Shown here piece after piece: positions 1,424 through 45,873 of a stretch of 64,000 bases of DNA. Source of the DNA: Macrostomum lignano (lineage: Eukaryota); assembly GCA_002269645.1 (NCBI GenBank), contig NIVC01003099.1, positions 1 through 64,000 on the forward strand, written 5' to 3'. Position numbers and translations under genes: made by a program. The stretch's first letter is position 1, and each line of letters begins with the position of its first letter. Below the pieces are notes generated by a model. That model was not told the origin of the DNA. It was given only the letters and a program-made list of their open reading frames with translations, and made no database searches.

Positions 1424-3276
1424 TCTAGTGTCTGGGGTACTTGTACCAGTGCTCTAGTAGCTTTTCAATCCCTTCAGCAAAGAATTCTTTGGTGGTACTT
1501 CTAATATATTGGCTGACAGCAGAGGCTAGGGCCTGTATGCTATCATAATGGGGACCTCAGGGTAACTCCTTCATCTGCCCAAACAGCCAGTAGTCATTCA
1601 GTGCTAAGTCTATAGTGATAGATCAAAATTATTTTTCAAATCAAAATCAAAATCAAAATCTTCGGTTTTTTAGAATCAAAATCAAAATTGAAATTGAAAT
1701 CGAAATTTTTTGAGCTTAACAAATTTTTACTTTTTTGCTAATCATGCAAAAAGGTTAATACCTTGCCTCTGCATGTATGAGCTTACATGTTTTATAAAAA
1801 GTATCTTTGATATGTTTAAACCAGAATACTTAAGATTTAACTTACTTTAAAATGCAAAATAGAAAATGCTGGTGTATTATGTATTATACACTCGTATATA
1901 GAAATATAGTAGAAGTTGTATTATACTTCACCACTGTTTAAGCTGAAGATCTAGATACAAGTAGCCTATATCCATTTTATTAAGGCTTTAAGTCTTTAGG
2001 CCAATTAAAATCCATGTTGATGAGTTCAGCCAATAGGCTTGTGGAGGTTAAGGTGGGTGCAGCACAAGGCCTGGAACAGTGTGTACCCAGCATAATCTTT
2101 TCTTGTAGAAAAGGCAATACTCACCTCCCCACTGAGTCTTTGAACCGCACTTCCTTTCATTTCCTATAGATTTTCTTACTCGTGTAGCATGATCATCAAT
2201 GTCTAAATTGTTAAAATATAAACAAAATTTTGAAATGATTTTCAATGAATGGTGTCAAAATTCAAAATCAAAATCAGCAAATCAGCAATTATTTCAATGC
2301 AAAATTAGCTTCAAAAAAATTCAGAAAATTGAAATCGAATTTCAATCTATCACTATAAGTCTGGCAAGTAGTGTGGGTTGTTGTCCTATTGTCCCTGGTC
2401 AGCTTGCCTTGGTGCTTAGTCTTGATGGCTTGGTGCAAATTCTCTAGCACTTAGATGTAATAAGTATTGGTAATGGTAGTGCGACGTGGAAGCCAGTCAA
2501 TGAGCAGAATGCCTCCTTGTCCCAGAAGATGGTTGCCATCTGCTTTCTAGCCAATGGTGCAGCCAGGGCCTTCACTGGGGTGGGCTCTCCAGCTGCCTTC
2601 CAGACGTTGCTCTGCATCTTCGACTCTGGCTCATGTAATGGATCCACAACTCATCCCCAGTCACAATTTAATCCAAAAAGTTTGGGTTGTCGCGGTAGGC
2701 TTGCAGGAGCTGCTGACATACATAGACCCGCTTGTGCTGCTGATCATCTGTCAGAAGCTCCGGGACCCAATGAGCAACAACTCGCGACATCCCAAGCTTG
2801 GCTGTGAGAATTTTGTGAACTGCTGTATAAAAAATATACCCACAGTCTCTGCCAGTTCATGCATGGTGATCCGACAGTCAACATTAAGTGCCTGATGTAC
2901 ACACTTGATATTAGACCATGGTGGCTGGCCTTCCACTATGTGGTAGATCTTCAACTGTCTCCTAGCCATCCTCAAACTGCTGCACCACTTGCTGACCATC
3001 AACTTCAAAGGGGTCATCTTCACCATATCCTGCATGCAACTGGTGAACAATGTTGGCCTGTTGCTTCCCTTCTTTCTACAAGAACCAAATTATGCTTTGC
3101 TTGGCTTCTTCGTAACTTAAAATGACTGCTGTAAAAAATAACAAGCATACTTGTATTTGATTGCACTACCATTAAAAGTTATGGGACAAGTGCTGTCTAT
3201 GGCCTAAAGTATGGTGACTTAACTGCTTTTTGTTTGGAAAAATGTTTGTCCACAAACTTTTCAAACGACCCATGTA
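1424..3276 (-). mobile_element. Degenerate mariner (Tc1/mariner) DNA transposon, interrupted by a MITE
   Basis: Minus-strand translation gives mariner blocks in order, with stops and frameshifts: N-terminal HTH (IIWFL*KEGKQQANIVHQLHAGYG...EDLPHSGRP, ~3110-2920), IVTGDELWIHY (~2665-2633), EPESKMQS..WK...KQMATIFWDK, GILLIDWLP, then PDLALNDYWLFGQMKE...FFAEGIEKLLEHW (~1610-1445). Mariner-like TIR TACATGGGTCGTTTGAAAAGT on the minus strand at 3276-3256. The other TIR was not found. Confidence 0.9.
1613..2355. mobile_element. Non-autonomous hAT-like MITE (743 bp)
   Basis: Perfect 11-bp TIRs TAGTGATAGAT (1613-1623) / ATCTATCACTA (2345-2355). 8-bp flanking duplication TAAGTCTA (1605-1612) / TAAGTCTG (2356-2363). 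Subterminal AAAATC and GAAATT repeats at both ends. Confidence 0.85.
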
Positions 3277-4531
3277 TTATAAAAAGATTTTGTTTAAAAA
3301 GAATGTTTTCAAAAAATTTAAAACATTTTTAATAGCAGTTTTCAATCATTCAATCATTTCAATCAAAGTGGCATAACATTGGTGCCATAGTTTGAATTAT
3401 GTATCAGTGTACACTAGGACTAAAAATGTTTTCAACTATGTATACCAAAGTTGTATGCTATTTTTCATTTTTGCTTTTTATTAGTTGTGCAGATTAACAA
3501 ACTTAAATGTTATATACTTGCAACATGCACTGAAAAAAGACAATTTCTATAAAATAAATACTCTAAATATTTATAAAATAAAAATTAGGAAAAACAAGGT
3601 TTTTAACGCACAAAGTTTAAAAAAGTTTTTTATTATTCTTTGTTCCATGTTGATGGTGTTGCATATAGGATATTTTTATATAAAGTCACCTTTTTAATTT
3701 TAATTTATTGTTCCATCATAAGGGGGTCTATATGCTGTAGGCATAATCAAAACTATGGTTTATTCCAATTTTCTATATTCAATAGCCATGGGGACCCCAA
3801 TATTACCAGATTCCCATAATTCCTCTAGCTATAGTTTTAACAAAAAGTCTAGGAAACAAAATATTAATATTTTGTCATTAGACAATTTAAGGAATTTTCT
3901 ACCCATTTTATACTTAAGCTTATGCCATAGAAAAATAACTATTTTTAATTATTTTTAAATAACATGTTTTTTTAAACAACAGAAATTTTTTCATATAAAA
4001 ATTATGGTGATATTTAAATAAAATTTTACTAAATTTTTTCAATAAACACATTTGGTTTATATGTTGTTTAACCTTGTTTTAAATAATAAATATTATATTA
4101 TTCATTGTAATTTCATAGAACTAATAGCAATTAAATATATGCAACTATGTTAAAAGCATCTTCTTTTCGATTTTATGCCAATTTTTCTACAATTGTTTCT
4201 TAAGCTATGCATGTACACTAAGGCTGATTTTAGGACTAAGTTTTTGCTAGAAAATTCTAGCATAGACTAAGGCATTTTGTACCAACCCAAATTCGTGGTT
4301 AGATTAAAAATCTTTACTATATATCTGTTCTACTTTCTACTTCTGTTCTATATATATATGATAAGATAAAATATTTCATTAAAGTTTTTTATTTTATGGT
4401 TTATGGCACATTTTAGAAACATCTAGCATAAGTGAAACAAAATGAAGCATTGGGAACTTTTTTACCCCATGATCATTGTGCATTACACACTTTCCTAGCA
4501 AACTTAGCAGAACTGTCTGGATTCCACAATC

Positions 4532-7500
4532 ATGGCAGGCATGGAAGCTGAAATAGTCAAAGATGAAACTGGTCAAGAACTAGTCAAACTTGTCATTGTT
4601 GACGAGACCAATCAAGGCCAGCCATCTTATGCTTATGTCACGCCTCAAGATGCCCAGAGAATTCTATCTGGCGAAGCCACCTTGCAAATTGATGAGGAAG
4701 GCAATGCTGTTATTGTGGCTACAGAACAGCAGCAGGCTGGTGATGTGGAGACCACTGCTCAGAGTGAGCAGCAGCAAGTGAGTTCGAATTATTGTATTGA
4801 GAAAACTAAAATTGTGTTTAATTATATATATGCAGTGTACTGAGTTTTGCTAAATGATAATGTCCAAGTCTCAGAATTTAAATGCCTGGTCGCTGTACTA
4901 CTCCAATGCGCTCTCTATCAACCCCTGCCCCCAATGTGCACTCTATCAACCCCTACCCCCAATGTGCACTTATCTATCAACCCCTACCCCCAATGTGCAC
5001 TCGATCAACCCCTACCCACAATGTGCACTTATCTATCAACCCCTACCCCAATGTGCACTCTGAACCCCTACCCCAATGTGCACTCTGAACCCCTACCCCC
5101 AATGTGCACTCGATAAACCCCTTCCCACAATGTGCACTTATCTATCAACCCCTACCCCAATGTGCACTCTATCAACCCCTACCCCCAATGTGCACTCGAT
5201 CAACCCCTACCCACAATGTGCACTTATCTATCAACCCCTACCCACAATGTGCACTTATCTATCAACCCATACCCACAATGTGCACTTATCTATCAAACCC
5301 TACCCCCAATGTGCACTTATCTATCAACCCCTACCCACAATGTGCACTTATCTATCAACCCCTACCCACAATGTGCACTCTATCAACCCCTACCCCCAAT
5401 GTGCACTCTATCAACCCCTACCGCCAATTCGCACTCTATCAACCCCTACCCCCAAAGTGATCTCTATCAACCCATTGATCAACCCCTACCCCCAATGTAC
5501 ACTCGATCAACCCTTACCCAGTGTACACTCTTACAATCTAATTTTTTGTTTTAAAAGGCTGAGTCTGCCGAAACGAAGCCAGCGGGCTCTGCTGTTGCGT
5601 CCCAGCAGCAGCAACAGCAACAGCAAGAATCCGCAGGCGGCGAAGGTGATGAAGAACAATTGATCATCACGGAGGAACCTGGCAAAAATGGCGGCCCGCC
5701 AACCGTAATCCTCAGCGATTCCCATGGCAACGTGATCACTCGCAAGGAGGTTACAAATCCTGATGAGCCAGTTATGCTAGACTATGGCATTCACAAGATC
5801 CAATACGTAATGCAGTCAGCTCACGCTGCTGCCACAGCCGCGGCCGCATCTGCTGCTGCAGCCACTCCCGGTTCGTCATCAAGTGGTAAACTCGCGGCTT
5901 CCTCTACTGCGGCTGCTCAGCCACAACAGGCCGCCACAGTGCCAGTGGCTTATCGAAAACTTCCGCGGCTAATGTCACCGCTCAGTTCAGGAGCACCTAT
6001 CTGCAGCAGGAGCATCTGGATGCGCTGAAGGACGCTGTGGCGTTCCTGTTGAAGGGTTTGAAGGTAATGACTGTTTCTGTACCCTCGCATGAGTCAGTGA
6101 CTGTTTCTGTACCCTCCCATGAGTCAGTGACTGTTTCTGTACCCTCCCATGAGTCAGTGACTGTTTCTGTACCCTCCCATGAGTCAGTGACTGTTTCTGT
6201 ACCCTCCCATGAGTCAGTGACTGTGTTTCTGTACCCTCCCATGAGTCAGTGACTGTTTCCGTACCCTCCCATGAGTCAGTGACTGTTTCTGTACCCTCCC
6301 ATGAGTCAGTGACTGTTTCTGTACCCTCCCATGAGTCAGTGACTGTGTTTCTGTACCCTCCCATGAGTCTGTGACTGTTTCTGTACCCTCCCATGATTCA
6401 GTGACTGTTTCTGTACCCTCCCATGAGTCAGTGACTGTTTCTGTACCCTCCCATGAGTCAGTGACTGCTTCTGTACCCTCCCATGAGTCAGTGACTGTTT
6501 CTGTACCCTCCCATGAGTCAGTGACTGCGTTGCTATACCCTCCGTGCATCAATACTTTGTTGATCCCAGATCCCGTGTCTTCCTTGTTCAATACGCTAAC
6601 CCCAAGCCAATGAACACACTCAGGACCGAGTATTCTACCCCGAGCCCTATCACAAGCGCTTAGGCAGCTACCAAGCCTACCAAGAGATGGTCAGACTGCA
6701 GAGCATCAGCCCAGAGACCGCCACCGAGTCACAACTGGCGCTGCTGCGTCGTCACTCGATGCTATTCCGACCAAGCGGTCCCAACAGCCGGCCGCTGACT
6801 CTCTACGAGCTGTCAGTCAACGAAGCCGCCGCTCAGATCTGCGCCGCTCATCCTGCTCTACTGTTTCATCGACGGGATTTGGTCAGCTACGCTAGGCAGG
6901 CTGTGAAGTACACTGGCATTGATTTTCCAGTGTCTTCACCTGGGCCATCCATTGGAACTGTGAGTGGCTTGGTTGCTTAGATTGGCCTGCTCAAAAGTCA
7001 GATGATTTCAATCTTCCGAAATCCTCCCAGATCCCCAGTTGCTGGGCCACAGCCTCCCAGATCCTCAGTTGCTGGGCCAGCCTCCCAGATCCTCAGTTGC
7101 TGGGCCAGCCTCCCAGATCCCCAGTTGCTGGGCCAGCCTCCCAGAGTGTCAGTTGCTGGGCCAGCCTCCCATATCCTCATTTGCTGAGCCAGCCTCCCAG
7201 ATTATCAGTTGCTGGGCCAGCCTCCCAGATCCTCAGTTTCTGGGCCAGCCTCCCAGATCCCCAGTTGCTGGGCCAGCCTCCCAGATCCTCAGTTTCTGGG
7301 CCAGCCTCCCAGATCCCCAGTTGCTGGGCCAGCCTCCCAGAGTGTCAGTTGCTGGGCCAGCCTTCCAGATCCCCAGTTGCTGGGCCAGCCTCCCAGATCC
7401 TCAGTTGCTGGGCCTGCCTCCCAGATCCTCAGTTGCTGGGCCAGCCTCCCAGAGTGTCAGTTGCTGGGCCAGCCTTAAGCCAACTTGGATCCCACTAAGG

Positions 7501-10500
7501 TGATTCCTCCCCACCCGCAGGCCGGCATGCAGGCCATGGGCCACCGAGCTGCCTCAGCCTCCTCATACCAGAAGTCCGCACCAGCCGCAGCCTCCAGCCT
7601 TGCCGGTCGGTCATCTGTCGCCGGCAGCAGCCGACTAAACGAAGAGGAGCAGGCCCTGATCCGCCAGACTGTGCAAGCAATGCTCAGCGAAGTGGCCTCC
7701 GTGCGCAACAAAGACCGCTACTCTTGTTCCGCTATCGAGCGCTATCTCTACGACGATACTCGCCGACTACAAGAGTTGAAGCAAGCCGGCCAGTTGGACA
7801 AGAATCTGGCTTTCCTGCGTCAGCTGGCCGTTATACACGGCCGGTTCACCCTGGGCCACATCAACCCGCAGGCCGTGCTGACTCCATTCGAAGCCGCTTG
7901 CAACGAAGCCGCCGTCTGGTTTGCCTACGAGAATCCAGCCGTGCTAACGCACCGAAAGCTGCTCATTGAACTGTGCAAACGCGCTGTGAGATCAACTGGC
8001 AGGTATTTCCCACCGACTGGCGGCATGCCCAGCGATCCAGCTGGCGGTGCAGCCGCTCAGAACCTGACCATCACCTCGCGCGAGAATTCCTTTCACATAT
8101 CGTTTCAACCGAACAAGCCGGAGCCCGAGTTCACCTCCACTGAGTCTGTCGTGCTTGAAGATGGCGCTGAAGATGACAGGCTCCCAGCTGAGGTCAACGA
8201 AGAGGCTTGGGCTGTAATCACCGGGGATCAGGATACCGAGGCTGAAGCTCAGGTGAGGAAGTTTTTCCGGGTTTGTCTAGAAGAGTAACCATGAGCTTTA
8301 GAATCCCAAATTTTCAGAATGGGTGTTTTAGAATCCCAGATCCCTAGAACTGGTGTTTTAGAATCCCAGATCCTCACAATGGGAGTTTTAAAATCCCAAA
8401 TCCCCGCAATGGGTTTTAGAATCCCAGCTCTTCACTATGAAGTTTTAAATTCCCAGAAGATCGTCAGAATGGGTGTTTCAGTATCCTAGATTTCAAGAAT
8501 ACGAGTTTTAGAATCCCAGATCCCAAGAATGGATATTTCAGAATCCCAGATCCCAAGAATGGATATTTCAGAATCCCAGATCCCAAGAATGGGTATTTCA
8601 GAATCCCAGATCCCAAGAATAAGTATTTCAGAATCCCAGATCCCAAGAATGGGTATTTCAGAATCCCAGATCCCAAGAATGGGAGTTTTAGAATCCCAGA
8701 TCCCAAGAATGGGTTTTTCAGAATCCCAGATCCCAAGAATGGGTATTTCAGAATCCAAGATACCAAGAATGGGAGTCTTAGAATCCAAGATCCCAAGAAT
8801 GGGAGTTTTAGAATCCAAGATACCAAGAATGGAAGTTTTAGAATCCCAGATTTCAAGAATAAGAGTTTTAGAATCCCAGATCTCAAGAATGGGAGTTTTA
8901 GAATCCCAAATCCTCACTATGTTAGTTTTAAACACCGAAATCCTTAAACATAAATTTGAAATTTATACTGATTTTGTTTTCCACACAGGGCCGGACCCTG
9001 CGCATGACCTGCACCATAGAGGAGAACTGCCTCACCGATACCCAAATTCTCGTCGCCTCCGGCGCTCACGACATTCGTCACGTGACCTCGCTAAATCTGA
9101 GCGGCCTCGGCTTGACCTCAATTAACCCCGTTCACCTGTCCAAATGCGCTTTTCTACGTCAGCTAGATCTGAGCGAGAATGCGCTGCAGTTCTTGCCCAG
9201 GTGTCTGTATCTGCCCCGACTGACTGTGCTGGACATTTCTGGCAATAATTTTCAGCATGCACCTCTGGTGGAGCAGTTTCCTCTTCTAGAGGAGCTCAAG
9301 GTGAGTGATCTGCATGTAGATTCTCTAGTCCAGCTCTCATTGAGATTCCAGCGTCTCTAGTCCAGCTCTCATTGTGAGATTCCAGCGTCTCTAGTCCAGA
9401 TCTCATTGTGAGATTCCAGCGTCTCTAGTCCAGCTCTCATTGAGATTCCAGCGTCTCTAGTCCAGCTCTCATTGTGAGATTCCAGCGTCTCTAGTCCAGC
9501 TCTCATTGTGAGATTCCAGCGTCTCTAGTCCAGCTCTCATTGTGAGATTCCAGCGCGTCTCTAGTCCAGCTCTCATTGTGAGATTCCAGCGTCTCTAGTC
9601 CAGCTCTCATTGTGAGATTCCAGCGCGTCTCTAGTCCAGATCTCATTGTGAGATTCCAGCGTCTCTAGTCCAGATCTCATTGTGAGATTCCAGCGTCTCT
9701 AGTCCAGCTCTCATTGTGAGATTCCAGCGTCTCTAGTCCAGATCTCATTGTGAGATTCCAGCGTCTCTAGTCCAGATCTCATTGTGAGATTCCAGCGTCT
9801 CTAGTCCAGATCTCATTGTGAGATTCCAGCATCTCTAGTCAAGATCTCATATTAAGATTTTGATGTCTCTAATCCAGATCTCATACTGGAATTCCAGTGT
9901 CTCCAATCCAGATCTCATAGTGGGATTTCAGTGCCCCTTTTCAGCTCCCATTTTGAGATTCCAGTGTCTCCAATACAGATCTCATAGTGAAATTCCAGTG
10001 TCTCCAACCCAGATCTCAGTGAGATTCCAGATCTCATAGTGAGATTACAGATCTCATAGTGAGATTGCAGATCTCATAGTGAGATTACAGATCTCATAGT
10101 GAGATACCAGAGTTTCCAATCCAGATCTCATAGTGAGATTCCAGTGTCTCCAACCCAGATTCATAGTAAGATTCCAGATCTCATAGTAAGATTCCAGATC
10201 TCATAATGAGATTCCATACCTATAATGTTTCCCAATCGTCTCTATCCAGGTCGACGACAGCGTGCTGTGCAGCGACCTCACTCTGTCCTACTTCAACCCG
10301 CGCCTTCGCACCCTGAACGGCCGGCCATTCAACCCATCCGGCCGCCTCACCGACTCCATGCTGAACGCTCTGCAAAGATCACGTGACGCCATCGTGAAGC
10401 AGATCGGCTACAAGTGGAACGTGGACTACGCCGAGCACTACAAGAAAGGCGTACCGGAGCGCGACGCAAATAAAGTGATTGAAAGCTTCGTGTTGGCTTT

Positions 10501-13500
10501 GAAGTCTCGCCCGTTGCCGCTGGAAGAGCCTTGGTCCCAGTTGAAAGATGTACTCATCAGGCGCTATGTTGGCGACATGCTCAACAGTAAACTGATTCTT
10601 GACAAGTCAATCCCGGCCGAAGTTCGCGATATTGAAGATGGCGAAGGCGAGTCTTCTATTGATCCTCAGGAAGCCAACCGAGCCGTGCTAGAGCGAGCTG
10701 TCCGTCGGGGTATGGCAGTTGTGTACACCGTTGTCAAGTCTCAGGGCGTTGTTGGCAAGCCTACTGCCGACTTCCTGCCAAGCGAAATCTCATTGAGAGG
10801 CGCTGCTGCCGCCGCCGCAGCAGCCGCCGCAGCGGAGCGCAAGCGTGCTAGGCCGGGTCAGGACGACTGGGAGTCCGTGGGGGTGCGCACTCGACCGACT
10901 AATAAACGGAAACGCTACACCGAACTTGGCGTCTTCTCTGAGGAGGAGTATCGAACTTTGAAGACTATCGAAGAGGAGAAGGAGAATCAGAGGCGCGAGA
11001 TGACTGTACAGCAGCGTGAGTTGTGCATGTTGTAGCTTTTATTTTATAGCCTTCGTTTCTTAGAAACTGTCTTTAGGTCTTGGTTGGTTTGTTTCTAAGA
11101 ATCTGTCTCCTTTACTGTACAGGTTTATTTCGAAGAAACTCCTCTTTTTCGGTTAGTTTCTAAGAATCTGTCTAATAGTCTGGTTTGTTTCTAAGAATCT
11201 GTCTAGTAGTCTTTGGTTTGTTTCAAAGAATCTGTCTAATAGTCTGGTTTGTTTCTAAGAATCTGTCTAATAGTCTGGTTTGTTTCTAAGAATCTGTCTA
11301 ATAGTCTTTGGTTTGTTTCTAAGAATATGTCTAATAGTCTTTGGTTTGTTTCTAAGAATATGTCTAATAGTCTGGTTTGTTTCTAAGAATATGTCTAATA
11401 GTCTTTGGTTTGTTTCTAAGAATATGTCTAATAGTCTTTGGTTTGTTTCAAAGAATCTGTCTAATAGTCTGGTTTGTTTCTAAGAATCTGTCTAATAGTC
11501 TGGTTTGTTTCAAAGAATCTGTCTAATAGTCTGGTTTGTTTCTAAGAATCTGTCTAATAGTCTTTGGTTTGTTTCTAAGAATATGTCTAATAGTCTTTGG
11601 TTTGTTTCTAAGAATATGTCTAATAGTCTGGTTTGTTTCTAAGAATATGTCTAATAGTCTTTGGTTTGTTTCTAAGAATATGTCTAATAGTCTTTGGTTT
11701 GTTTCTAAGAATATGTCTAATAGTCTTTGGTTTGTTTCAAAGAATCTGTCTAATAGTCTGGTTTGTTTCTAAGAATCTGTCTAATAGTCTGGTTTGTTTC
11801 TAAGAATCTGTCTAATAGTCTTTAGTTTGTTTCTAAGAATCTGTCTAATAGTCTTTGGTTTGTTTCTAAGAATCTGTCTAATAGTCTTTAGTTTGTTTCT
11901 AAGAATCTGTCTAATAGTCTTTGGTTTGTTTCTAAGAATCTGTCTAATAGTCTTTGGTTTGTTTCTAAGAATCCTTCACTGTACAGGTTTATTTCTAATA
12001 AACTCCTATTTTTCGGTTAGTTTCTTAGAAACTGTCTTTAGGTCGAGGTGGGCTTGTTTCTAAGAATATGTCTCCTTTACTGTACAGGTTTATTTCTAAG
12101 AAACTCTTATTTTTCAGTTATTTCTTAGAAACCGTCTTTAGGCCTTGGCTGGTTTGTTTCCAAGAAGCAGTCCTAGTCTTGATTGTTTTGTTTCTAAGAA
12201 CCTGTCTCAGTCTTCGTTTATTTCCAAGAAACAATTGTCTAACATTTTTTATTTTATTTCTAACAAACAACTCATTGCAGGTATGTTTCTAAGAAACATT
12301 CTGCTTTGCTGGTTTTATTTCTTAGAAACGTTTTTGGAGTCTTCATTGTTTTTTTCTAATAATCTCTCCTAGTCTTGGTTTATTTCGAAAAATCACTTTC
12401 AGTCTGTTGCTTTGTTTCTAAGAATCTGTTTCCAAGTCTGTTAGTGTAGATTTGCGTTCAACTACAATGCCTCCCAACCCTGCCACACAGGCCTTCAATA
12501 CCAGGAGATCAAGACCAAGTCCAGCTATACCGAACCGGCCTCGGTTCCAGCGCTGCCGCAGTCTCTCACGGCGTCGGCTGCAGGCGCCACAGCTGCCAGC
12601 GCCTCCGGTCGCGCCCGGGTCAGCTTCCACGAAGAGCCGATGGACGAGTCTGTAGGCGGTAATCTGTCCGACTCGGATATCAACTTGGCCGGTTCGTCCA
12701 GCGGCGCCGTTGCCATCAGCGGCGGTGCCGGAGTGTCCGGTGGCGGCAACGAACTCCGACCCATCGTCACGGCCTACACCCGGTCACTGCGCGATGTCAG
12801 CGATAAATATCGCTACCAACCGGTGCACTTTATCCGCTGCCATTCCAAGGATAATAATCCTATGGATGCCGAGACCAAAGTCTGGCGTTGCGCATTCGAA
12901 CCGGCCATCGGTTCCAGCGGAGAAGCCATGCCGGACGGGACAACTACTCTTGTGGCCACCTGCGGCGGGGACAGCGTCTGTCTAATTGACTGCGACACTG
13001 GCAAAGTGGTGAAACGGTTCAAGCATTTGAGCGAGGAGTTCTATTGTCTGGCTTGGACCGTTATCCCCATTGAGGATAAGCCGACTAAGATTCTGGGTGA
13101 GTTGCTATGGGAATTTGTGTTTTTTATAACGCTTTTGGTGGGATTCTAACTCGTGGTGGGGGAGTTCGGGATTTCTAATTAGTGTGGGAGATTTTAAGGG
13201 GATTCTATGTAGTATGGGGATTTTTAGGGATTAGAATTCGTGTGGAGAATTTTGAGGGGATACTAATTAGTGTGGGATTATTATGGGGTTATAATTAGTA
13301 TAGGATTCTAATTAGCGTGTGATAAATATGAAATTCTAATTAGTGTGAGATTTAGGGATTCTAATTAGTGTGGGATTATTATGAGATTCTAATTAGTGTG
13401 GGATTATTATGAGATTCTAATTAGCGTGGGATTATTATAGGATTATTATGGAATTCTAATTAGTGTGGGATTATTGTGGGATTCTAATTAGTGTGGGATT

Positions 13501-15394
13501 ATTTAAGGATTGTAATTAGTGTGAGGACTTTCGGGGATTTCTAATAGGATTTTTATCTGAAGATTTATAGCATACGTATATGAGGATGCTTTCAGCAATC
13601 TTTAAAACTCCCCTTTGTTTTTATCCCATTCCCAACTATGATTTTCCCAACCAACCCCATTCGCAGCCGCCGCTGGCCGACTCCGCATGATCCGGCTGCT
13701 GTACCCCGACCAGATGGTCTGCTACAGCGAGATGCAGGGCCACCGGGACGAGATCGCCTGTCTGGCCTTCCACCCCAACCAGCCCACCGTGCTGTTCTCA
13801 GGCGACAGCAAAGCCGCCATCCTGGTCTGGGATATCGGCATCCCCATGCCGCCGGACTTCCAGGCCAGCTACACCCTGCTGGCTAAGCTGCGCTGTCCCC
13901 GTCCGGATGTGAATCCCGTGCTCAATCTGGTGTTCATGCCGACTCTGGACTGCCTCATTGCCGGCTGCGAAGATGGCATCTTCGTCTGGAAGATGGCCAG
14001 CGTGATGTCTGACAACAGCAAGGCGCTGCCTGAGCGGGAACCAGACGCTGAGATCAAAGTGCCAACTAATAAAGAGCCCTGCTTTGACGGCCTGTGCCTG
14101 CTGAATGACACAGTTCTAGTGAGCAAATGCGTTGAAGAGGGCCGACTGGTGATCTTCGACCTGTACTCTGTGTATGCCAAGATGACCGGCCATTTCAAGA
14201 CCATCTTTGTCGACATTCTCGGCTCGGTTCGGTGGAAAACTACTGACGAGATTTATATCAACTGCTCGGCCAGGCCCGGGTCCAGGCCGTCACCTGCGGC
14301 GACAATGAGGGCAACATCTGGATTTACGATTTTAGCCGGATTAACTGGGCCGGCGTAAGCCGCAAGAACAAGTTCCGCATGGAGGCTTCCAAGATTCTGC
14401 CCTGGCCGCAGTGCTCCGTTGGAGGCGACGGCAGGATGCCTGAGGTGAGCTGGTTTATTCTATTATAATCTAATAAGCCTCCCAGATCCTCAGTTGCTGG
14501 GCTGCCAGCCTCCCAGATCCTCAGTTGCTGGGCCAGCCTCCCAGATCCTCAGTTTCTGGGCCAGCCTTCCAGATCCTCAGTTGCTGGGCCAGCCTCCCAG
14601 ATCCCCAGTTGCTGGGCTGCCAGCCTCCCAGATCCTCAGTTGCTGGGCCAGCCTCCCAGATCCTCAGTTTCTGGGCCAGCCTCTCAGTCTCAGATCCTCA
14701 GTTGCTGGGCCAGCCTCCCAGATCCTCAGTTGCTGGGCTGCCAGCCTCCCAGATCCTCAGTTGCTGGGCTGCCAGCCTCCCAGATCCTCAGTTGCTGGGC
14801 CAGCCTCCCAGATCCTCAGTTTCTGGGCCAGCCTTCCAGATCCTCAGTTGCTGGGCCAGCCTTCCAGATCCCCAGTTGCTGGGCCAGCCTCCCAGATCCC
14901 CAGTTGCTGGGCCAGCCTTCCAGACCCCCAGTTGCTGGGCCAGCCTCCCAGATCCTCAGTTGCTGGGCCAGCCTTCCAGATCCCCAGTTGCTGGGCCAGC
15001 CTCCCAGATCCCCAGTTGCTGGGCCAGCCTCCCAGATCCTAGATCCAGCCACATCGGCAGCTCCCCCAACCCGCTCGCTACCCAGGAGAGCTCGGCAGGC
15101 AGCCGGGAGCACAGCCCAGTTGTGAACACCACAGACGCCAGCGGCGATGGCCAGTTCATCTGCGCAGTCACGGACAACAATCTGGTGTGCATCTGGAAGG
15201 CGTCAGCAGCGGAACCTGGCGCCGCTGGTCAGGGCGAGCTGGACCAGTCCGGCACCTCCACTGCCGTGGCTGCAGCCAGCAGCAGCGTCCAGCTGGCCTC
15301 CTCTGGCCAGCATGAGGTGGCGGACTTGGACGCTGAGCCGCGGTCTCGGGCGGCTGGCAGCGGCGGAGTCGGCCGGCCCAAGCGATCCACTTAG
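4532..15394 (+). CDS. LRWD1: LRWD1/ORCA-like LRR-WD40 protein with N-terminal extension carrying two NAB NCD2-like domains (~1510 aa)
   Basis: Exons 4532-4777, 5558-6063, 6624-6959, 7521-8252, 8989-9300, 10250-11015, 12551-13096, 13667-14444, 15086-15394. All introns GT-AG with matching phases (0,0,0,0,0,1,1,0). LRR block VTSLNLSGLGL...LRQLDLSENALQFLP...LTVLDISGN...QFPLLEELK...PRLRTLNG. WD40 blocks VWRCAFEP, LVATCGGDSVCLIDCDTG, EEFYCLAW, ILAAAG, GHRDEIACLAFHP, CGDNEGNIWIYD, AVTDNNLVCIW, which follow LRWD1 order. Needs +1 nt near 5930-5940 and +1 nt at GGG 14278-14280. Confidence 0.85.
4903..5525. repeat. Minisatellite, 25-32 bp units (CTATCAACCCCTACCCCCAATGTGCACT variants), intron 1 of LRWD1-like gene
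   Basis: Direct reading of tandem units. Confidence 0.95.
6068..6530. repeat. Minisatellite, 30-bp unit GTGACTGTTTCTGTACCCTCCCATGAGTCA, intron 2
   Basis: Direct reading; starts immediately after the GTAATG donor. Confidence 0.95.
7021..7475. repeat. Minisatellite, 28-bp unit CCTCCCAGATCCTCAGTTGCTGGGCCAG, intron 3
   Basis: Direct reading; same family at 14475-15040 and 18672-19640. Confidence 0.95.
8296..8925. repeat. Minisatellite, 30-bp unit (TCAGAATCCCAGATCCCAAGAATGGGTATT variants), intron 4
   Basis: Direct reading. Confidence 0.95.
9325..10210. repeat. Minisatellite, 34-bp unit GTCCAGCTCTCATTGTGAGATTCCAGCGTCTCTA decaying to ~20-bp units, intron 5
   Basis: Direct reading. Confidence 0.95.
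11050..12430. repeat. Minisatellite, 31/33-bp unit GGTTTGTTTCTAAGAATCTGTCTAATAGTCT(TT) with degenerate flanks, intron 6
   Basis: Direct reading. Confidence 0.95.
13140..13555. repeat. Degenerate ~20-30 bp minisatellite (ATTCTAATTAGTGTGGGATT core), intron 7
   Basis: Recurrent core motif. Confidence 0.85.
14475..15040. repeat. 28-bp minisatellite family, second array, intron 8
   Basis: Same unit as 7021-7475. Confidence 0.95.
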
Positions 15395-15470
15395 CTGTCC
15401 ATCAGGCACGGGTTTCATGCACCCAATTGAAGCAGAACTCTCTTAAACTTGTAAATAATCTTATTTAAAC

Positions 15471-15476
15471 AATAAA
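15471..15476 (+). terminator. Putative polyadenylation signal AATAAA of the LRWD1-like gene
   Basis: AATAAA 77 nt after the stop codon. Confidence 0.5.
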
Positions 15477-16169
15477 AACTACAGTAATATCTCTGTCGGC
15501 CTACTAACAATATAGCAAGTAAAAATAGTTAGTAGCATGAAGAGGGTTGTAATGTTATGTTATATATAATAATTGCGTCATTTAAATATTTGTTACTTAT
15601 CCATCATTGTGCAAAACTATATTCTTTTAATTTTTGTTGTTTTTTGTGTGGCATAAAATGGCAGCTGCTGAAAAAAAACATTTACGCCCCCGTAATGTTT
15701 ACACTCGCACTACTTTGCATTAGTAGTATCACGAATGCGTTTCTACTATATGTTACTAATTAGTAGTCTGATATCTAATCATGGTAAGTAATATTGTTGT
15801 AAAATTCTTGTACGAGACGCGTTAAAAATTCAAATTTGTGCAACGTAACTTATAATTTTTGGTTGATGTCTTGTAATTATTATTAATAGCTGTCTGGTTG
15901 GTTAATCTTGAAATAAATTATTAATTAAATAAATACAAACATTCATATTCTACTACTGTCGGCTTGGCAACCATTTGTACTTTTATTATCTATTTTTGGC
16001 CTGAAAAGATGATTTAATTAAATCTTCTCTGCAAACTGTTTTATTAGCAGTTATGATAATTATAATAATTAGTTTTTAATTAAAACATTAGATAAATTTG
16101 TATTAGTTGATCATGGGGTGAAAATCGTTTGAACAATCATTCAACAATACAACAATCATTTTGACATAA

Positions 16170-17330
16170 TGAGATTTGAGACTTGACTGATTGATTTTCA
16201 ATGGGATTTGAGAGTTGATCAATTGATTTTCCATGAGATTTGAGGGTTGATCAGTTTATTATCAATGGAATAAGAGAGTTGATCAATTGATTTTCCATGA
16301 GATTTGAGAGTTGATCAGTTTATTATCAATGGAATAAGAGAGTTGATCAATTGATTTTCTATGAGATTTGAGAGTTGATCAGTTTATTATCAATGGAATA
16401 AGAGAGTTGATCAATTGATTTTCTATGAGATTTGAGAGTTGATCAGTTCATTATCAATGGAATAAGAGAGTTGATCAATTGATTTTCTATGAGATTTGAG
16501 AGTTGATCAGTTTATTATCAATGGAATAAGAGAGTTGATCAATTGATTTCCTATGAGATTTGAGAGTTGATCAGTTTATTATCAATGGAATAAGAGAGTT
16601 GATCAATTGATTTTCTATGAGATTTGAGAGTTGATCAGTTTATTATCAATGGAATAAGAGAGTTGATCAATTGATTTTCTATGAGATTTGAGAGTTGATC
16701 AGTTTATTATCAATGGAATAAGAGAGTTGATCAATTGATTTTCTATGAGATTTGAGAGTTGATCAGTTTATTATCAATGGAATAAGAGAGTTGATCAATT
16801 GATTTTCTATGAGATTTGAGAGTTGATCAGTTTATTATCAATGGAATAAGAGAGTTGATCAATTGATTTTCCATGAGATTTGAGAGTTGATCAGTTTATT
16901 ATCAATGGGATTTGAGAGTTGATCAATTGATTTTCTATGAGATTTGAGGGTTGATCAGTTTATTATCAATGGAATAAGAGAGTTGATCAATTGATTTTCC
17001 ATGAGATTTGAGGGTTGATCAGTTTATTATCAATGGAATAAGAGAGTTGATCAATTGATTTTCTATGAGATTTGAGAGTTGATCAGTTTATTATCAATGG
17101 AATAAGAGAGTTGATCAATTGATTTTCTATGAGATTTGAGAGTTTATCAATTGGTTTTCCATGAGATTTGAGAGTTGATCAATTGATTTTCCATGAGATT
17201 TGAGGGTTGATCAGTTTATTATCAATGGAATAAGAGAGTTGATCAATTGATTTTCCATGAGATTTGTGAATTGATCAATTGATTTTCCATGAGATTTGAG
17301 AGTTGATCAGTTTATTATCAATGAGATTTG
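16170..17330. repeat. Intergenic minisatellite, 64-bp unit made of two related ~32-bp halves (GAGAGTTGATCA core)
   Basis: AGTTTATTATCAATGG recurs at 16381, 16445, 16509 (64-bp period). Confidence 0.95.
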
Positions 17331-17394: not shown

Positions 17395-20046
17395 TCAAAG
17401 TCCCTGCTCACAGAGCCGGTCGAGTTTCAGAAAATCCTCAACTTCCAAGGCCCTGGTACTCAGTCCGTAGCATCGCATCCAGCCTGCCAAGCAGCTCTCA
17501 GACGCGGGAGCGAATCCCAGTCTCAGACAGGAGAATCGGTCAGCTTCATCGCTAGATCCCATCTCTAATCCGAGTCCGATTTCGGTGCGGCTTAGAAAAG
17601 TCCCGTTCAAATAGAATCTTGGATTTCTGCTGGCGTTGTAATAGACAAATCCCAGTGACATTGTCTGCGGGATTAATGGCTTGGTCCCTGTGTTGGGGAA
17701 TGCATTGGCAACCGACTGGGAGTATGTGCCTCTGATGCCGTTCTCTGACCAGTAGGCATAGTTGTACATGTAGCTGCTGCCTTTGGCGAATGTATTGCCG
17801 CTGCTGCTGTTGTTGCATTGCTGGAATCGGTGGTAGAACTGGTACCTGCGTGATGTGGTGAAATGACATTGATGAAGGTAAGAGGTTTGGGGTGTTGGGG
17901 GTACGAGTTTGGAGGTTGTTGGGGGGAAGAATTTTGGATTGTTGGGGGTAGAGTTTTGGGGTGTTGGGGGTACGAATTTTGGGGGGTAAGAGTTTTGGGG
18001 TGGTGGGGGTAAGAGTTTTGGGTGTTGGGGGTAAGAGTTTTGGGGTGGTGGGGGTAAGAGTTTTGGGTGCTGGGGGTAAGAGTTTTGGGTGGTGGGGGTA
18101 AGAGTTTTGGGTGTTGAGGGTAAGAGTTTTTGGGTGGTGAGGGGTCGGAGGTCTGAGGTGGTGGGGGTAAGAGTTTGGAGTGGTGGGGAGTAACAGTTTG
18201 GGGTGGCGCAGGGGGTGCGCTCATTAGTTTTGTGTCGGGACAAGTGCGGATCATGGGAATTCTAATACCCTCCGTTAAGTCTTTGTGGGTTCCAATCAGT
18301 GTATCCAATTTGTAAATTTATGTTTGGCATTTTGTCAACTCATTTATCTGAGTGAGATAAATGACAAAAAACACACGCACGCACCTTTTGTCCAACAGGT
18401 GCTGCACCTTTGCGTATACAGAGAAAGAACCGTTGCGTTTGAGAATATTTTCGAATCCCGGTGTCTCCACGCTCAGATAGGATTCATTGTGGCCTCCGAG
18501 CTGCACTCCATCGGCGTCCAGGGTGGCATTGCGGGCTGACAGGCAGAACTGCCTAGGATCGACTTGGTTGATGAGGCCCGACTGACGGAAATTGTAGAAC
18601 AGCTTCATGCCGAGGCTGGTGAGGGCATCTGGAAGGTCAGGTGGGTGGGTGATTGCATAAGCTTGACATATACTCAGTTGCTGGGCCAGCCTCCCAGATC
18701 CTCAGTTTCTGGGCCAGCCTCCCAGATCCCCAGTTTCTTGGCCAGCCTCCCAGATCCCCAGTTGCTGGGCCAGCCTCCCAGATCCTCAGTTGCTGGGCAG
18801 CCTCCCAGATCCCCAGTTGCTGGGCCAGCCTCCCAGATCCTCAGTTGCTGGGCCAGCCTCCCAGATCCCCAGTTGCTGGGCCAGCCTCCCAGATCCTCAG
18901 TTGCTGGGCCAGCCTCCCAGATCCCCAGTTGCTGGGCCAGCCTCCCAGATCCTCAGTTGCTGGGCAGCCTCCCAGATCCCCAGTTGCTGGGCCAGCCTCC
19001 CAGATCCTCAGTTGCTGGGCCAGCCTCCCAGATCCCCAGTTGCTGGGCCAGCCTCCCAGATCCTCAGTTGCTGGACCAGCCTCCCAGATCCTCAGTTGCT
19101 GGGCCAGCCTCCCAGATCCCCAGTTGCTGGGCCAGCCTCCCAGATCCTCTGCAGTTGCTAGGTCAGCCTCCCAGATCCCCAGTTGCTGGGCCAGCCTCCC
19201 AGATCCTTATTTGCTGGGCAACCAGCCTCCCAGATCCTCAGTTGCTTGGCAACCAGCCTCCCAGATCCTCAGTTGCTGGGCAACCAGCCTCCCAGATCCT
19301 CAGTTGCTGGGCCAGCCTCCCAGATCCTCAGTTTCTGGGCCAGCCTCCCAGATCCTCAGTTTCTGGGCCAGCCTCCCAGATTCTCAGTTGCTGGACAGCC
19401 TCCCAGATCCTCAGTTGCTAGGCCAGCCTCCCAGATCCTCTGCAGTTGCTAGGTCAGCCTCCCAGATCCTCAGTTGCTAGGCCAGCCTCCCAGATCCTCT
19501 GCAGTTGCTAGGTCAGCCTCCCAGATCCTCAGTTGCTGGGTCAGCCTCCCAGATCCTCAGTTGCTGGGCCAGCCTCCCAGATCCTCAGTTGCTGGGCAGT
19601 CAGCCTCTCAGATCCCCATTTGCTAGGCCAGCCTCCCACCAGATTCTCAAGCTAAAACCGATCACCAAGTCCATTTGGCACTGCTAACCATCAGACGCGG
19701 TAGGCTCGCTAGCCGAGTGGAAAAACGAGCTGCAACCCCCATCCGGAATCCACTGCTGCGCAGTCGAGGCGCACGCTTTACCAAGGAAACAGATGCCGCT
19801 GCTAGAATTGAAATGAAAGCCGTTGCAGACAGACTTGCTGGAGCACAGGACGCTGCAGTCGGCCTCGCTCTCAGTTCTGACAATGAATTCCGAAAACTTC
19901 TCCGTTTGCAGACTCAAATTTGAGTAGTTGTAAATTGCTGGACACAGCTCAGTCTTTTTGAACGATAATCCAGAGGCTCGAACACTCAGATCCGGCCAGG
20001 CTGCTGTTATTGCTGCCACCAGAGTGATGAAGCTTCTAAAAGTCAT
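17395..20046 (-). CDS. Secreted protein: signal peptide + PAN/Apple domain + LamG/pentraxin-like (ConA-fold) domain, ~350 aa
   Basis: Exons 20046-19689, 18628-18385, 17845-17395; GT-AG, phases 1 and 2 match; no stops. Hydrophobic N-terminus MTFRSFITLVAAITAAW. PAN cysteine pattern CSVLCSSKSVCNGFHFNSSSGICFL. C-terminal GFVYYN...RFYLNG...LRLG...LAGWMRCYGLSTRAL resembles LamG/pentraxin. An upstream in-frame ATG exists at 20088. Confidence 0.8.
17880..18205. repeat. G-rich ~24-bp minisatellite (GTGGTGGGGGTAAGAGTTTTGGGG), intron 2 of PAN-LamG gene
   Basis: Direct reading; same family at 20895-21170. Confidence 0.9.
18672..19640. repeat. 28-bp minisatellite family, third array, intron 1 of PAN-LamG gene
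   Basis: Same unit as 7021-7475. Confidence 0.95.
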
Positions 20047-20105
20047 ACTTGTTCTTTCAAGTCCTTGAAATTTGAGGCCGATTTCCATATTGAACCTGCT
20101 GGGCC

Positions 20106-20153
20106 TTTAAATAGCCAGATTCATGCCGGAGTATGCATGACCTCAGATGACCT
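20106..20153 (-). promoter_or_regulatory. Candidate core promoter of the PAN-LamG gene: TATA-like TATTTAAA (20113-20106) and perfect DR4 AGGTCA-N4-AGGTCA (20153-20138)
   Basis: Motifs read directly; function inferred. Confidence 0.4.
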
Positions 20154-21357: not shown

Positions 21358-31475
<10,118 letters not shown>

Positions 31476-35337: not shown

Positions 35338-35760
35338 GCTTCCCGTAGGCGTTGACAAGGACGCAAATCTTTGCTGTCAATAATAGTACAAACTACTCAG
35401 CTCTCTTTAATCAAGCCGTTTTTTGAAGCAAACCAACCTAAAACCTAAGGCTTATAAATGCAACTCTTGAGAGAGTACTCTGCTCTGCGTGAGCACAGTT
35501 TTAGATCCTGCTTACCCAGCCAATGGCAGGTCAGTTCTAAGCTCCAACCTCCCGTAGTAAGCAGACTCTGTCAGGGATGTGATTAGTGCTGAACAGGGAT
35601 GGCTGACACACGTTAATGCTTGCCAAGTCACTTCGAAGGGAAAATGCTACTTCTATAAGCCAGCAGTTGACAGCACGACTGTTGAAGACCTTCGGTGGAA
35701 CCGTTCTGCAATCTAATATTTCCTAGCATCGGGGGCGCTTAACTGGAGGGCTCCACTGTC

Positions 35761-45390: not shown

Positions 45391-45873
45391 TCAATTGCCA
45401 TCAGAAGCAGAATCAGCGTTGGCTTTCTGCAAAGCCAGAGCCGCATTAATCTGCCGCTGCCGCTCCGCCGCACCGGGAGGTGGGCATTCGCCCATCAGGC
45501 CCTGGCGGTAGTCTTGCACCGCCTCGCGGATCTCCTGCTCTGTGCACATGGCGAACGGGCCGTACTTGACAACGGGTTCTCGCAAAGGCACACCGGCGCC
45601 AATCAACAGGTGGCAGGGCTCGCTGTCTGTGGACACTAAAAGAGATTCGCCTTGGCCGAGAGAGGCTCGCCAGTGCGGGGGCAGTGGCCGGCCGCCCACA
45701 ATGGCGCTTGAGCCGCTGAAGCAATAGGCGAATGCGCAGCCGTACTGGTCTGGGATCTGCGGGGAGCGAGGGGGACAGGTTTAGCGCGGTTTAGTGCAGT
45801 CATGCAGTGTATTATTGCCTTAGCATCTTTTTAGAATAATCTCATAGGTTGTCTGTCCCAGTGTGTCTGTCCG

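What the first reader, a model, noticed from the sequence alone, without database searches (positions are those of the whole stretch)
4532..15394. NAB corepressor NCD2-like domains fused in frame to an LRWD1/ORCA heterochromatin reader and ORC partner
Seen: exon 3 encodes RPLTLYELSVNEAAAQICAAHPALLFHRRDLVSYARQAVK and exon 4 encodes LRQLAVIHGRF...LTPFEAACNEAAVWFAYENPAVLTHRKLLIELCKRAVR. Exon 4 ends at a strong CAG|GTGAGG donor (8252) whose phase 0 matches the acceptor at 8988 that opens the LRR exon. Known: NAB1/NAB2, Drosophila Nab and C. elegans MAB-10 share NCD2 with the core L-[ST]-L-H-E-L-T-[VI]-N-E-A-A-A-Q, a transcriptional repression domain. LRWD1 is normally LRR+WD40 only (~650 aa); it binds ORC and repressive histone methyl marks. 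Inference: one ~1500-aa protein could couple a NAB-type repression module to origin licensing and heterochromatin reading, a combination I have not seen described.
Basis: partly seen in the sequence, partly recalled or inferred. Interest (0 to 1): 0.85.

Follow-up and report, generated by a model that had tools for sequence, protein, structure and literature searches.

The report
Flatworm LRWD1 carrying two NAB-type NCD2 domains
The window holds one Macrostomum lignano gene whose roughly 1530-residue product is the flatworm version of the replication and heterochromatin protein LRWD1/ORCA with two NAB-corepressor NCD2 domains added at its front; the combination is real, shared by parasitic flatworms, absent from the LRWD1 of the other animals sampled, already present unnamed in public annotation, and of unknown function.

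Summary
The window is Macrostomum lignano contig NIVC01003099.1, bases 1-64000.

- **Domains.** Nine GT/AG exons (4532-15394, + strand) encode two N-terminal beta-rich modules, two NCD2 domains, an LRWD1-type LRR and an LRWD1-type WD40 propeller. NCD2 (Pfam PF04905) scores 49.5 and 26.8 bits. The only structural match of the predicted NCD2 fold is the NAB1 NCD2 structure 2YUF.
- **Junction.** The GenBank protein for this locus (PAA53358.1), taken from an RNA-seq-based annotation, is reproduced exactly by splicing 8252 to 8989. Intact paralogues give 1530 residues.
- **Conservation.** The same architecture occurs in Dicrocoelium, Fasciola and Mesocestoides. Fragmentary models from Cichlidogyrus and Dibothriocephalus join NCD2 to the LRR. 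In one relative, a single uninterrupted reading frame covers the join.
- **Distribution.** Listed LRWD1 from an annelid, an oyster and birds (about 620-690 residues) shows no NCD2.
- **Caveats.** This copy has two 1-nt deletions that break the frame, probably assembly errors. The protein is not a NAB family member, because it lacks NCD1. In NAB2 the CHD4-binding domain is separate from NCD2, so no repression mechanism can be assumed. An LRWD1-only isoform made by trans-splicing is not excluded.

I rate it a new variant of a known kind, of moderate interest.

The parts
4532..4777 (+). Exon 1: start codon and a conserved N-terminal beta-rich motif (GQELVKL...YAYV...GEATLQ)
   Evidence: ATG 4532 follows an in-frame stop. 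GT donor after 4777. The motif is conserved in Mesocestoides and in Logan contig L002. AlphaFold gives strands with pLDDT about 60-82.
5558..6063 (+). Exon 2: poly-Q/A linker, a second beta-rich module, and the first helix of NCD2 domain 1 (from about 5992). This copy lacks one C after 5941, which causes a frameshift.
   Evidence: deletion relative to L001. Repeat module aligned.
6624..6959 (+). Exon 3: core of NCD2 domain 1 (protein residues about 228-354; window 5992-6063 plus 6624-6932)
   Evidence: Pfam NCD2 49.5 bits. phmmer to 2YUF NAB1 E 5.9e-06. AlphaFold pLDDT above 90, six helices.
7521..8252 (+). Exon 4: NCD2 domain 2 (residues about 400-530; window 7629-8021) and an acidic linker. 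Phase-0 donor after 8252.
   Evidence: Pfam NCD2 26.8 bits alone, 67.6 bits for both copies in the whole protein. Same helix pattern as domain 1. The two copies cross-hit in BLASTP.
8253..8988 (+). Intron 4, the disputed join. It is 736 nt, of which 617 nt (8297-8913) are a 30-bp minisatellite, like the other introns of this gene.
   Evidence: It is spliced out in PAA53358.1. Reading through the donor reaches a stop at 8286-8288.
8989..9300 (+). Exon 5: start of the LRWD1-homologous part (LRMTCTIEENCL... motif and the leucine-rich repeats)
   Evidence: LRR_LRWD1, LRR_4 and LRR_8. The motif is conserved across flatworms.
10250..11015 (+). Exon 6: end of the LRR_LRWD1 domain and the helical or charged middle region with a poly-A tract
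   Evidence: LRR_LRWD1 covers residues 637-791 of the full protein. Splice sites.
12491..13096 (+). Exon 7: linker and first blades of the LRWD1 WD40 propeller
   Evidence: WD_LRWD1 89.3 bits. PDB 8siy and 8siu LRWD1.
13667..14444 (+). Exon 8: middle blades of the WD40 propeller. This copy lacks one T after 14279, which causes a frameshift and a premature stop at 14356-14358.
15086..15394 (+). Exon 9: last WD blade and C-terminal tail, stop TAG 15392-15394. AATAAA at 15471-15476.
   Evidence: WD_LRWD1 runs to residue 1467 of 1530.

Best explanation
**Shown.**
- Window 4532-15394 is one gene, Macrostomum lignano Mlig008621 copy g3.
- It encodes the flatworm orthologue of LRWD1/ORCA.
- A lineage-specific extension of about 610 residues is spliced in frame onto the normal LRR plus WD40 body.
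- The extension holds two small beta-rich modules and a tandem pair of all-helical NCD2 domains, about 125 residues each. Outside flatworms this domain was seen only in proteins with the NAB layout.

**Inferred mechanism.**
- The WD40 propeller keeps the LRWD1 role of docking on repressive trimethyl-lysine chromatin and ORC.
- The NCD2 pair adds a protein-binding or repression surface to the same polypeptide.
- The protein would then both read and enforce silent, late-replicating chromatin.
- I put about 0.35 on this mechanism. The partner of NCD2 is unknown.

**Frameshifts.** The two 1-nt deletions in this copy are most likely long-read assembly errors rather than decay.
For: **Identity of the window.** It equals NIVC01003099.1:1-64000, and PAA53358.1 is rebuilt exactly from window exons that include the 8252-to-8989 join.

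**Same-species proteins.**
- Intact 1530-residue proteins come from paralogous loci g1 and g5.
- The g1 locus L001 is collinear with the window. Its exons differ at only three positions.
- The annotation is RNA-seq derived and was cut at mapped SL and poly(A) sites (PMC5730564).
- An independent older annotation (1506 residues) also joins the halves, using a donor 39 nt upstream.

**Orthologues.**
- NCD2 x2 + LRR_LRWD1 + WD_LRWD1 is found in Dicrocoelium (2092 residues), Mesocestoides (1950) and Fasciola gigantica (1605).
- NCD2 + LRR_LRWD1 is found in fragmentary models from Cichlidogyrus and Dibothriocephalus.
- Logan genomic contig L002 has one reading frame (2839-3594) covering NCD2 domain 2 and the conserved LRR-leader motif. 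A single tblastn match spans M. lignano residues 432-637, across the exon 4/5 boundary at 607/608.
- The join region aligns across seven flatworm sequences.

**NCD2 homology.** Pfam hits, phmmer to 2YUF, an AlphaFold model with pLDDT above 90 for both domains, and Foldseek top and only credible hit 2YUF.

**LRWD1 orthology.** PDB 8siy full-length LRWD1 matches at E 2.7e-68, and WD_LRWD1 scores 199 bits over model positions 11-387 of 388.

**Outside flatworms.** None of the 120 LRWD1 hits listed carries PF04905. The non-flatworm ones include Owenia (689 residues), Crassostrea (617) and about 100 birds.

**Assembly-error reading.** Between the g3 and g1 loci, 4.5 kb of upstream non-coding DNA shows 9 single-base gaps against 3 substitutions. 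That is the same indel-heavy pattern as in the exons.
Against: - No RNA reads were inspected directly. Support for the junction rests on the provenance of the annotation and on conservation.
- In M. lignano about 15% of genes lie in operons whose repeat-adjusted spacers are about 100 bp (PMC8629364). Interval 8253-8988 minus its minisatellite is about 119 bp.
- An ATG lies 16 nt after the acceptor.
- The spliced leader ends in ATG, which would be in frame at this phase-0 acceptor. An additional LRWD1-only mRNA is therefore possible.
- Nothing here tests any function of the NCD2 pair.
- NCD2's own mechanism in NAB proteins is undefined, and CHD4 binding maps to a different NAB2 domain.
- The model's pTM of 0.46 gives no reliable relative orientation of the two domains.
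Confidence: 0.85

Rival explanations
1. Two neighbouring genes, possibly an operon. An NCD2-only gene would end at the stop at 8286-8288. A separate LRWD1 gene would start at ATG 9004 or at an SL-donated ATG at acceptor 8988. The fusion would then be an annotation artefact from a polycistronic precursor.
For: - Operons are common in M. lignano, with repeat-adjusted spacers of about 100 bp, and their intergenic regions are often repeat-filled.
- The spacer here is about 119 bp after removing the minisatellite.
- Read-through gives a stop 11 codons after the donor, and an ATG follows the acceptor closely.
- About 7% of assembled transcripts are precursors.
Against: - The annotation pipeline cut transcripts at mapped SL and poly(A) peaks, yet left this gene whole at three loci.
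- The interval has a strong GTGAGG donor and looks like the other seven introns.
- The residues just after the acceptor belong to a motif conserved in all flatworm orthologues. The Met aligns with non-Met residues there.
- A relative encodes the join in one reading frame.
- Six genera share the architecture or the NCD2-LRR join.
- The acceptor context ACACAG does not fit the enriched trans-splice motif [T/C]TNCAG.
Confidence: 0.05
2. The copy in this window (g3) is a young pseudogene. The two frameshifting 1-nt deletions would be real, and only the paralogues g1 and g5 would make the full protein.
For: - Both deletions are in the deposited assembly, and the GenBank protein for g3 is truncated to 1126 residues.
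- M. lignano is a recent polyploid with redundant copies.
- The second deletion (T in GGTGTC) is not in a homopolymer.
Against: - Apart from the two deletions the 4.59-kb coding sequence differs from g1 by a single base.
- Non-coding DNA between the two loci shows three times more 1-nt gaps than substitutions. That points to residual long-read indel errors rather than divergence.
Confidence: 0.2
3. The NCD2 resemblance is a chance or convergent helical motif, not homology to the NAB domain.
For: - The first-copy Pfam match in M. lignano covers only model positions 72-117 of 125.
- The second copy scores just above the cut-off.
- The Foldseek E-value is only 6.5e-03.
Against: - The orthologues match nearly the whole model: positions 2-119 of 125 in Fasciola and Dibothriocephalus, 6-121 in Cichlidogyrus, at up to 80 bits.
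- The representative search with this region returns mainly proteins with the NAB layout once the flatworm LRWD1 hits are set aside.
- 2YUF is the only structural hit with probability 1.0.
- The core LTLxE(L/V)(S/T)VNEAAAQ(I/L)C...LL..R..L...ARQ is nearly identical to human NAB1.
Confidence: 0.02

Closest known systems
LRWD1/ORCA (human; PDB 8SIY full length, 8SIU WD40 domain)
   Same: N-terminal LRWD1-type leucine-rich repeats, a middle linker and a C-terminal LRWD1-type WD40 propeller. E 2.7e-68 to 8siy_A, and WD_LRWD1 matched almost end to end. From the literature, LRWD1 binds repressive histone marks through its WD40, stabilises ORC on chromatin and keeps repeats silent (PMC4442312, PMC9233303, PMC5389698).
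   Different: The flatworm protein is 1530-2092 residues, against about 620-690 in the annelid, oyster and bird proteins and 651 in the solved full-length chain 8siy_A. It carries about 610 or more extra N-terminal residues with two NCD2 domains and beta-rich modules, and a longer middle linker.
NAB1/NAB2 corepressors of EGR factors (NCD2 domain; PDB 2YUF)
   Same: The NCD2 domain itself. Both copies hit Pfam PF04905, the core motif is shared, and the predicted fold matches 2YUF.
   Different: There is no NCD1 (the EGR-binding domain) and no other NAB-family Pfam hit besides NCD2. NCD2 is present twice in tandem and is joined to LRWD1. In NAB2 the CHD4/NuRD contact is a separate C-terminal domain, so NuRD recruitment cannot be assumed here.
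EED (Polycomb WD40 reader of trimethyl-lysine)
   Same: After LRWD1 it is the next-best PDB sequence match to the propeller (E about 6e-09, residues 1115-1225).
   Different: The match is partial and far weaker than to LRWD1. The protein is not an EED orthologue.

Membership tests
LRWD1/ORCA | C-terminal WD40 propeller of the LRWD1 type | tested here: met
   PF23215 WD_LRWD1 at 199 bits, model positions 11-387 of 388. PDB 8siy/8siu LRWD1 at E 2.7e-68 and 1e-57.
LRWD1/ORCA | LRWD1-type leucine-rich repeats upstream of the propeller | tested here: met
   PF23211 LRR_LRWD1 at 45.1 bits against a cut-off of 28, residues 637-791.
LRWD1/ORCA | Binding to ORC and to H3K9me3/H3K27me3/H4K20me3 | not testable with these tools
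   Known for mammalian LRWD1 from the literature. There is no assay here, and the cage residues were not examined.
LRWD1/ORCA | Canonical size and architecture (LRR + WD40 only, about 650 residues) | tested here: not met
   1530 residues with two NCD2 domains ahead of the LRR. Non-flatworm LRWD1 of 617-689 residues lacks PF04905. It is therefore an orthologue with an added module.
NAB corepressors (NAB1/NAB2/Nab/MAB-10) | NCD2 domain | tested here: met
   PF04905 twice, 67.6 bits for the whole protein. 2YUF matched by sequence and by fold.
NAB corepressors (NAB1/NAB2/Nab/MAB-10) | NCD1 domain (EGR binding and multimerisation) | tested here: not met
   No NCD1 hit at E up to 1 on the exon translations or E up to 0.01 on full proteins of six flatworm species. 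The NAB-layout hits carry the NCD1-type sequence (ELQLYRVLQRANLL...), which is absent here.
NAB corepressors (NAB1/NAB2/Nab/MAB-10) | C-terminal CHD4-interacting domain | tested here: inconclusive
   No NAB-family Pfam hit other than NCD2 appears, but this region is poorly conserved and I did not search for it specifically.

The most novel reading that the evidence does not exclude
Rosetta-stone reading. The stable fusion of NCD2 to LRWD1 across flatworms could mean that the two act in one pathway in animals generally. The unexplained NCD2 repression activity of NAB1/NAB2 would then work by engaging LRWD1/ORC-linked heterochromatin machinery, such as the H3K9 methyltransferase assemblies that ORCA scaffolds. 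Flatworms would have hard-wired an interaction that is non-covalent elsewhere.
Probability: 0.08. Interest if true: 0.75.

Novelty: new variant of a known kind. Interest (0 to 1): 0.45.

Why it matters
- **NCD2 outside the NAB layout.** Outside flatworms, the hits I inspected from the NCD2 search have the NAB layout. NAB reviews treat NCD2 as a repression domain separate from the CHD4-binding domain, and nothing I retrieved explains how it represses.
- **A testable hint.** Finding NCD2 duplicated and fused to a chromatin reader and ORC partner throughout parasitic and free-living flatworms suggests what it might touch.
- **A different LRWD1.** Flatworm LRWD1 is a substantially different protein from the mammalian one.
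- **A tractable system.** M. lignano has RNAi and transgenesis, so the idea can be tested.
- **A parasite-specific feature.** The extension marks a replication and heterochromatin factor in trematodes and cestodes.
- **Limits.** It is a lineage-specific domain gain in an otherwise ordinary orthologue, and it is already present, unnamed, in public gene models.

Tried and rejected
- **Failed homology searches.** Two searches with the search for homologous proteins, using the N-terminal half and a junction-spanning query, returned nothing useful. The word index seems to have been swamped by poly-Q/A and LRR words. The exhaustive HMMER search gave the answer instead.
- **A tiny intron in exon 2.** I considered a 54-nt intron (GTAAAC...ACAG) to explain the frame change in exon 2. 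The phases do not fit, and the paralogue shows a 1-nt deletion instead.
- **Homopolymer patches.** My first patches (extra A at 5960, extra G at 14281) restored the frame but were placed wrongly. The true differences are a C after 5941 and a T after 14279.
- **Literature.** No paper mentions both LRWD1 and NCD2, and none mentions the locus name Mlig008621. A broad search combining LRWD1 with flatworm terms was uninformative.
- **N-terminal modules.** The AlphaFold model of residues 1-211 has mean pLDDT 59.6. Its fold search found no significant match, best E 0.39, so these modules stay unassigned.
- **CHD4/NuRD recruitment.** I rejected this as the mechanism, because CHD4 binding maps to a separate NAB2 domain.


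Full report
**1. What is in the sequence**

Stop-to-stop translation of 3500-16500 on the + strand shows a string of coding blocks separated by short repeat-filled gaps. A Pfam scan of these blocks gave the following hits.
- NCD2 (PF04905) in 6600-6977: 49.5 bits, E 5.5e-13.
- NCD2 in 7479-8285: 26.8 bits, cut-off 25.
- LRR_LRWD1 in 8932-9357.
- WD_LRWD1 in 12445-13146 and in 13642-14355.

Reading the splice sites gives nine GT/AG exons with matching phases: 4532-4777, 5558-6063, 6624-6959, 7521-8252, 8989-9300, 10250-11015, 12491-13096, 13667-14444 and 15086-15394. The stop is TAG 15392-15394 and AATAAA lies at 15471. The conceptual product is 1530 residues, but only if two frame changes are repaired, one in exon 2 and one in exon 8.

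**2. Where the window comes from and what is annotated there**

An exhaustive HMMER search with residues 252-607 found a 1530-residue protein that is 100% identical over the query. Cluster look-up identifies it as Macrostomum lignano hypothetical protein BOX15_Mlig008621, copies g1 and g5 (PAA87918.1 and PAA48055.1). Copy g3 (PAA53358.1) is 1126 residues.

The g3 contig, NIVC01003099.1, is identical to the window from base 1. PAA53358.1 is reproduced exactly by splicing window 6687-6959, 7521-8252, 8989-9300, 10250-11015, 12491-13096 and 13667-14358. The deposited annotation of this very locus therefore uses the disputed junction.

That annotation was not made by an ab initio predictor. It comes from a genome-guided RNA-seq assembly plus a de novo transcriptome. 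Transcripts were cut at experimentally mapped spliced-leader and poly(A) sites, and reading frames were then called (PMC5730564). An older independent annotation (UniProt A0A1I8J7L8, 1506 residues) also joins the halves, using an in-frame donor 39 nt upstream.

**3. The two frameshifts**

The paralogous g1 locus (L001, NIVC01000211.1) is collinear with the window at about 98-99% identity, introns included. Across 4.59 kb of coding sequence the window differs at three positions.
- A missing C after 5941.
- C>A at 12949.
- A missing T after 14279.

In 4.5 kb of upstream non-coding DNA the two loci differ by 9 single-base gaps and only 3 substitutions. This indel-heavy pattern is what residual long-read assembly errors look like. 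I therefore read the frameshifts as probable assembly errors, with about 0.2 on a real, very young pseudogene. Either way the species has intact copies.

**4. Is the fusion conserved?**

Yes. Full-length models carry NCD2 (two matched stretches) + LRR_LRWD1 + WD_LRWD1 in three species.
- Dicrocoelium dendriticum: 2092 residues.
- Mesocestoides corti: 1950 and 1992 residues.
- Fasciola gigantica: 1605 residues.

Fragmentary models from Fasciola hepatica, Cichlidogyrus casuarinus and Dibothriocephalus latus run from NCD2 into the LRR.

The strongest single item is Logan contig L002, from run DRR639055. It is genomic DNA of a related flatworm that I could not identify.
- One reading frame (2839-3594) encodes NCD2 domain 2 and the conserved leader of the LRR part.
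- A single tblastn match covers M. lignano residues 432-637, across the exon 4/5 boundary at 607/608.
- No splicing is needed there, so the join cannot be an artefact of gene prediction.

The region just after the M. lignano acceptor (LRMTCTIEENCLTDTQILVASGAHDIR) aligns with LSLTCEECNNVIDDVTIYTATGTDSLK in Dicrocoelium and its equivalents in the others. The Met at 9004 is not conserved as Met.

**5. Is it restricted to flatworms?**

A search with the WD40 domain listed LRWD1 from the following, all with LRR_LRWD1 and/or WD_LRWD1 and none with PF04905.
- The annelid Owenia: 689 residues.
- The oyster Crassostrea virginica: 617 residues.
- A hemichordate fragment.
- About a hundred birds: 640-690 residues.

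The solved full-length LRWD1 chain is 651 residues. In the other direction, apart from flatworm LRWD1 and its fragments, the sequences I inspected from the NCD2-region search have the NAB layout, with NCD1 followed by NCD2. On this sample the gain is specific to Platyhelminthes. It is present in Macrostomorpha and in all three neodermatan classes sampled, which suggests an origin before they diverged.

**6. Are the domains really NCD2?**

- **Sequence.** phmmer aligns residues 302-360 to human NAB1 NCD2 (2YUF) at E 5.9e-06, with the core LTL(Y/H)EL(S/T)VNEAAAQ(I/L)C...ALL..R..L...ARQ. The orthologues match nearly the whole 125-position Pfam model.
- **Structure.** AlphaFold2 was run on residues 225-545 with ten flatworm sequences. 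It gives two confident domains, with pLDDT mostly above 90. Both have the same six-helix pattern, and a disordered linker separates them. Foldseek against the PDB returns 2YUF as the only credible match, with probability 1.00 and target TM 0.61. Every other hit has E above 2.
- **Duplication.** The two copies cross-hit each other in BLASTP, so they are an internal duplication.
- **Not a NAB protein.** No NCD1 was found.

**7. The rest of the protein**

Residues 1-211 hold two short beta-rich modules that are conserved in cestode and trematode orthologues, which have two copies of the second module. The model has moderate confidence and no significant fold match.

**8. How it probably works**

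**Shown:** one polypeptide combines an LRWD1 body with two NCD2 domains.

**From the literature:** mammalian LRWD1/ORCA uses its WD40 to bind repressive histone marks. It stabilises ORC, scaffolds H3K9 methyltransferases and helps silence repeats (PMC4442312, PMC9233303, PMC5389698). In the NAB reviews retrieved, NCD2 is a domain of the repressor NAB2, and CHD4/NuRD binding maps to a separate C-terminal domain (PMC11554739).

**Inferred:**
- The NCD2 pair supplies an extra protein-binding or repression surface at sites chosen by the WD40 and ORC interactions.
- I give this about 0.35.
- The alternatives are a dimerisation or autoregulatory role, or a flatworm-specific partner.

**9. The operon question**

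M. lignano has many operons with short, often repeat-filled spacers, and its spliced leader ends in ATG. Interval 8253-8988 minus its minisatellite is about 119 bp. The acceptor is phase 0, so a trans-spliced LRWD1-only mRNA would be in frame.

I found no evidence for such an isoform. The annotation pipeline did not cut here at any of three loci, and the acceptor context does not fit the enriched trans-splice motif. Only reads can exclude it. As the sole explanation, two separate genes gets about 0.05.

**10. Verdict**

This is an LRWD1 orthologue with a flatworm-specific NCD2 x2 extension. It is already present in public gene models but, as far as my searches show, not described in the literature. 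I rate it a new variant of a known kind, of moderate interest.

Noticed in passing
window 4903-5473, 6068-6543, 7023-7475, 8297-8913, 9322-10216, 11151-11973, 13168-13545, 14476-15040: Every one of the eight introns is largely filled by a 28-34-bp minisatellite. Introns 3 and 8 share the same 28-bp unit, CCTCCCAGATCCTCAGTTGCTGGGCCAG, and matches to that array recur downstream at about 18657-19638. The arrays translate into long open frames that could mislead ORF-based scans.
   Followed up: partly
window 5941 and 14279: This copy has two 1-nt deletions relative to the paralogous locus. They truncate the GenBank protein PAA53358.1 at both ends. Between the two loci, 1-nt gaps outnumber substitutions 3 to 1 in non-coding DNA, which suggests residual long-read indel errors in the Mlig_3_7 assembly.
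   Followed up: partly
window 8213/8214: An alternative in-frame donor (GCT|GTAATC), 39 nt upstream of the main donor, is used in an older annotation (...EEAWA|GRTLRM...). It may be an alternative isoform or a prediction difference.
   Followed up: no
window 4532-4777 and 5558-5810: Two short beta-rich modules sit at the N-terminus. They are conserved in cestode and trematode LRWD1, which carry the second module twice. They have no Pfam family and no significant fold match.
   Followed up: partly
window about 21400-30016, - strand: A kinesin-3-like gene (Kinesin motor, Kinesin_assoc, KIF1B and C2-C2_1 hits) lies convergent with the LRWD1 gene. The same neighbour sits next to the paralogous locus.
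   Followed up: partly
window 19687-20106, - strand: [quoted passage not shown]
   Followed up: no
window 33976-35376, - strand: A 467-residue uninterrupted open reading frame in a GC-rich block has no Pfam hit. By eye its sequence has several hydrophobic stretches and could be a membrane receptor.
   Followed up: no
window 45394-45780 and 48133-48570, - strand: Exons of a pirin gene (Pirin and Pirin_C cupin domains).
   Followed up: no
window 56235-57851, + strand: Overlapping long open frames (217, 202 and 185 residues). The two that were scanned have no Pfam hit. They may be a degraded mobile element or an unannotated gene.
   Followed up: no
locus L002 (Logan DRR639055 contig, 4554 bp): An unidentified relative of M. 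lignano packs the N-terminal motif, both NCD2 domains, the LRR and the post-LRR region into 4.5 kb with much shorter introns. It has no intron at the position of M. lignano intron 4.
   Followed up: partly
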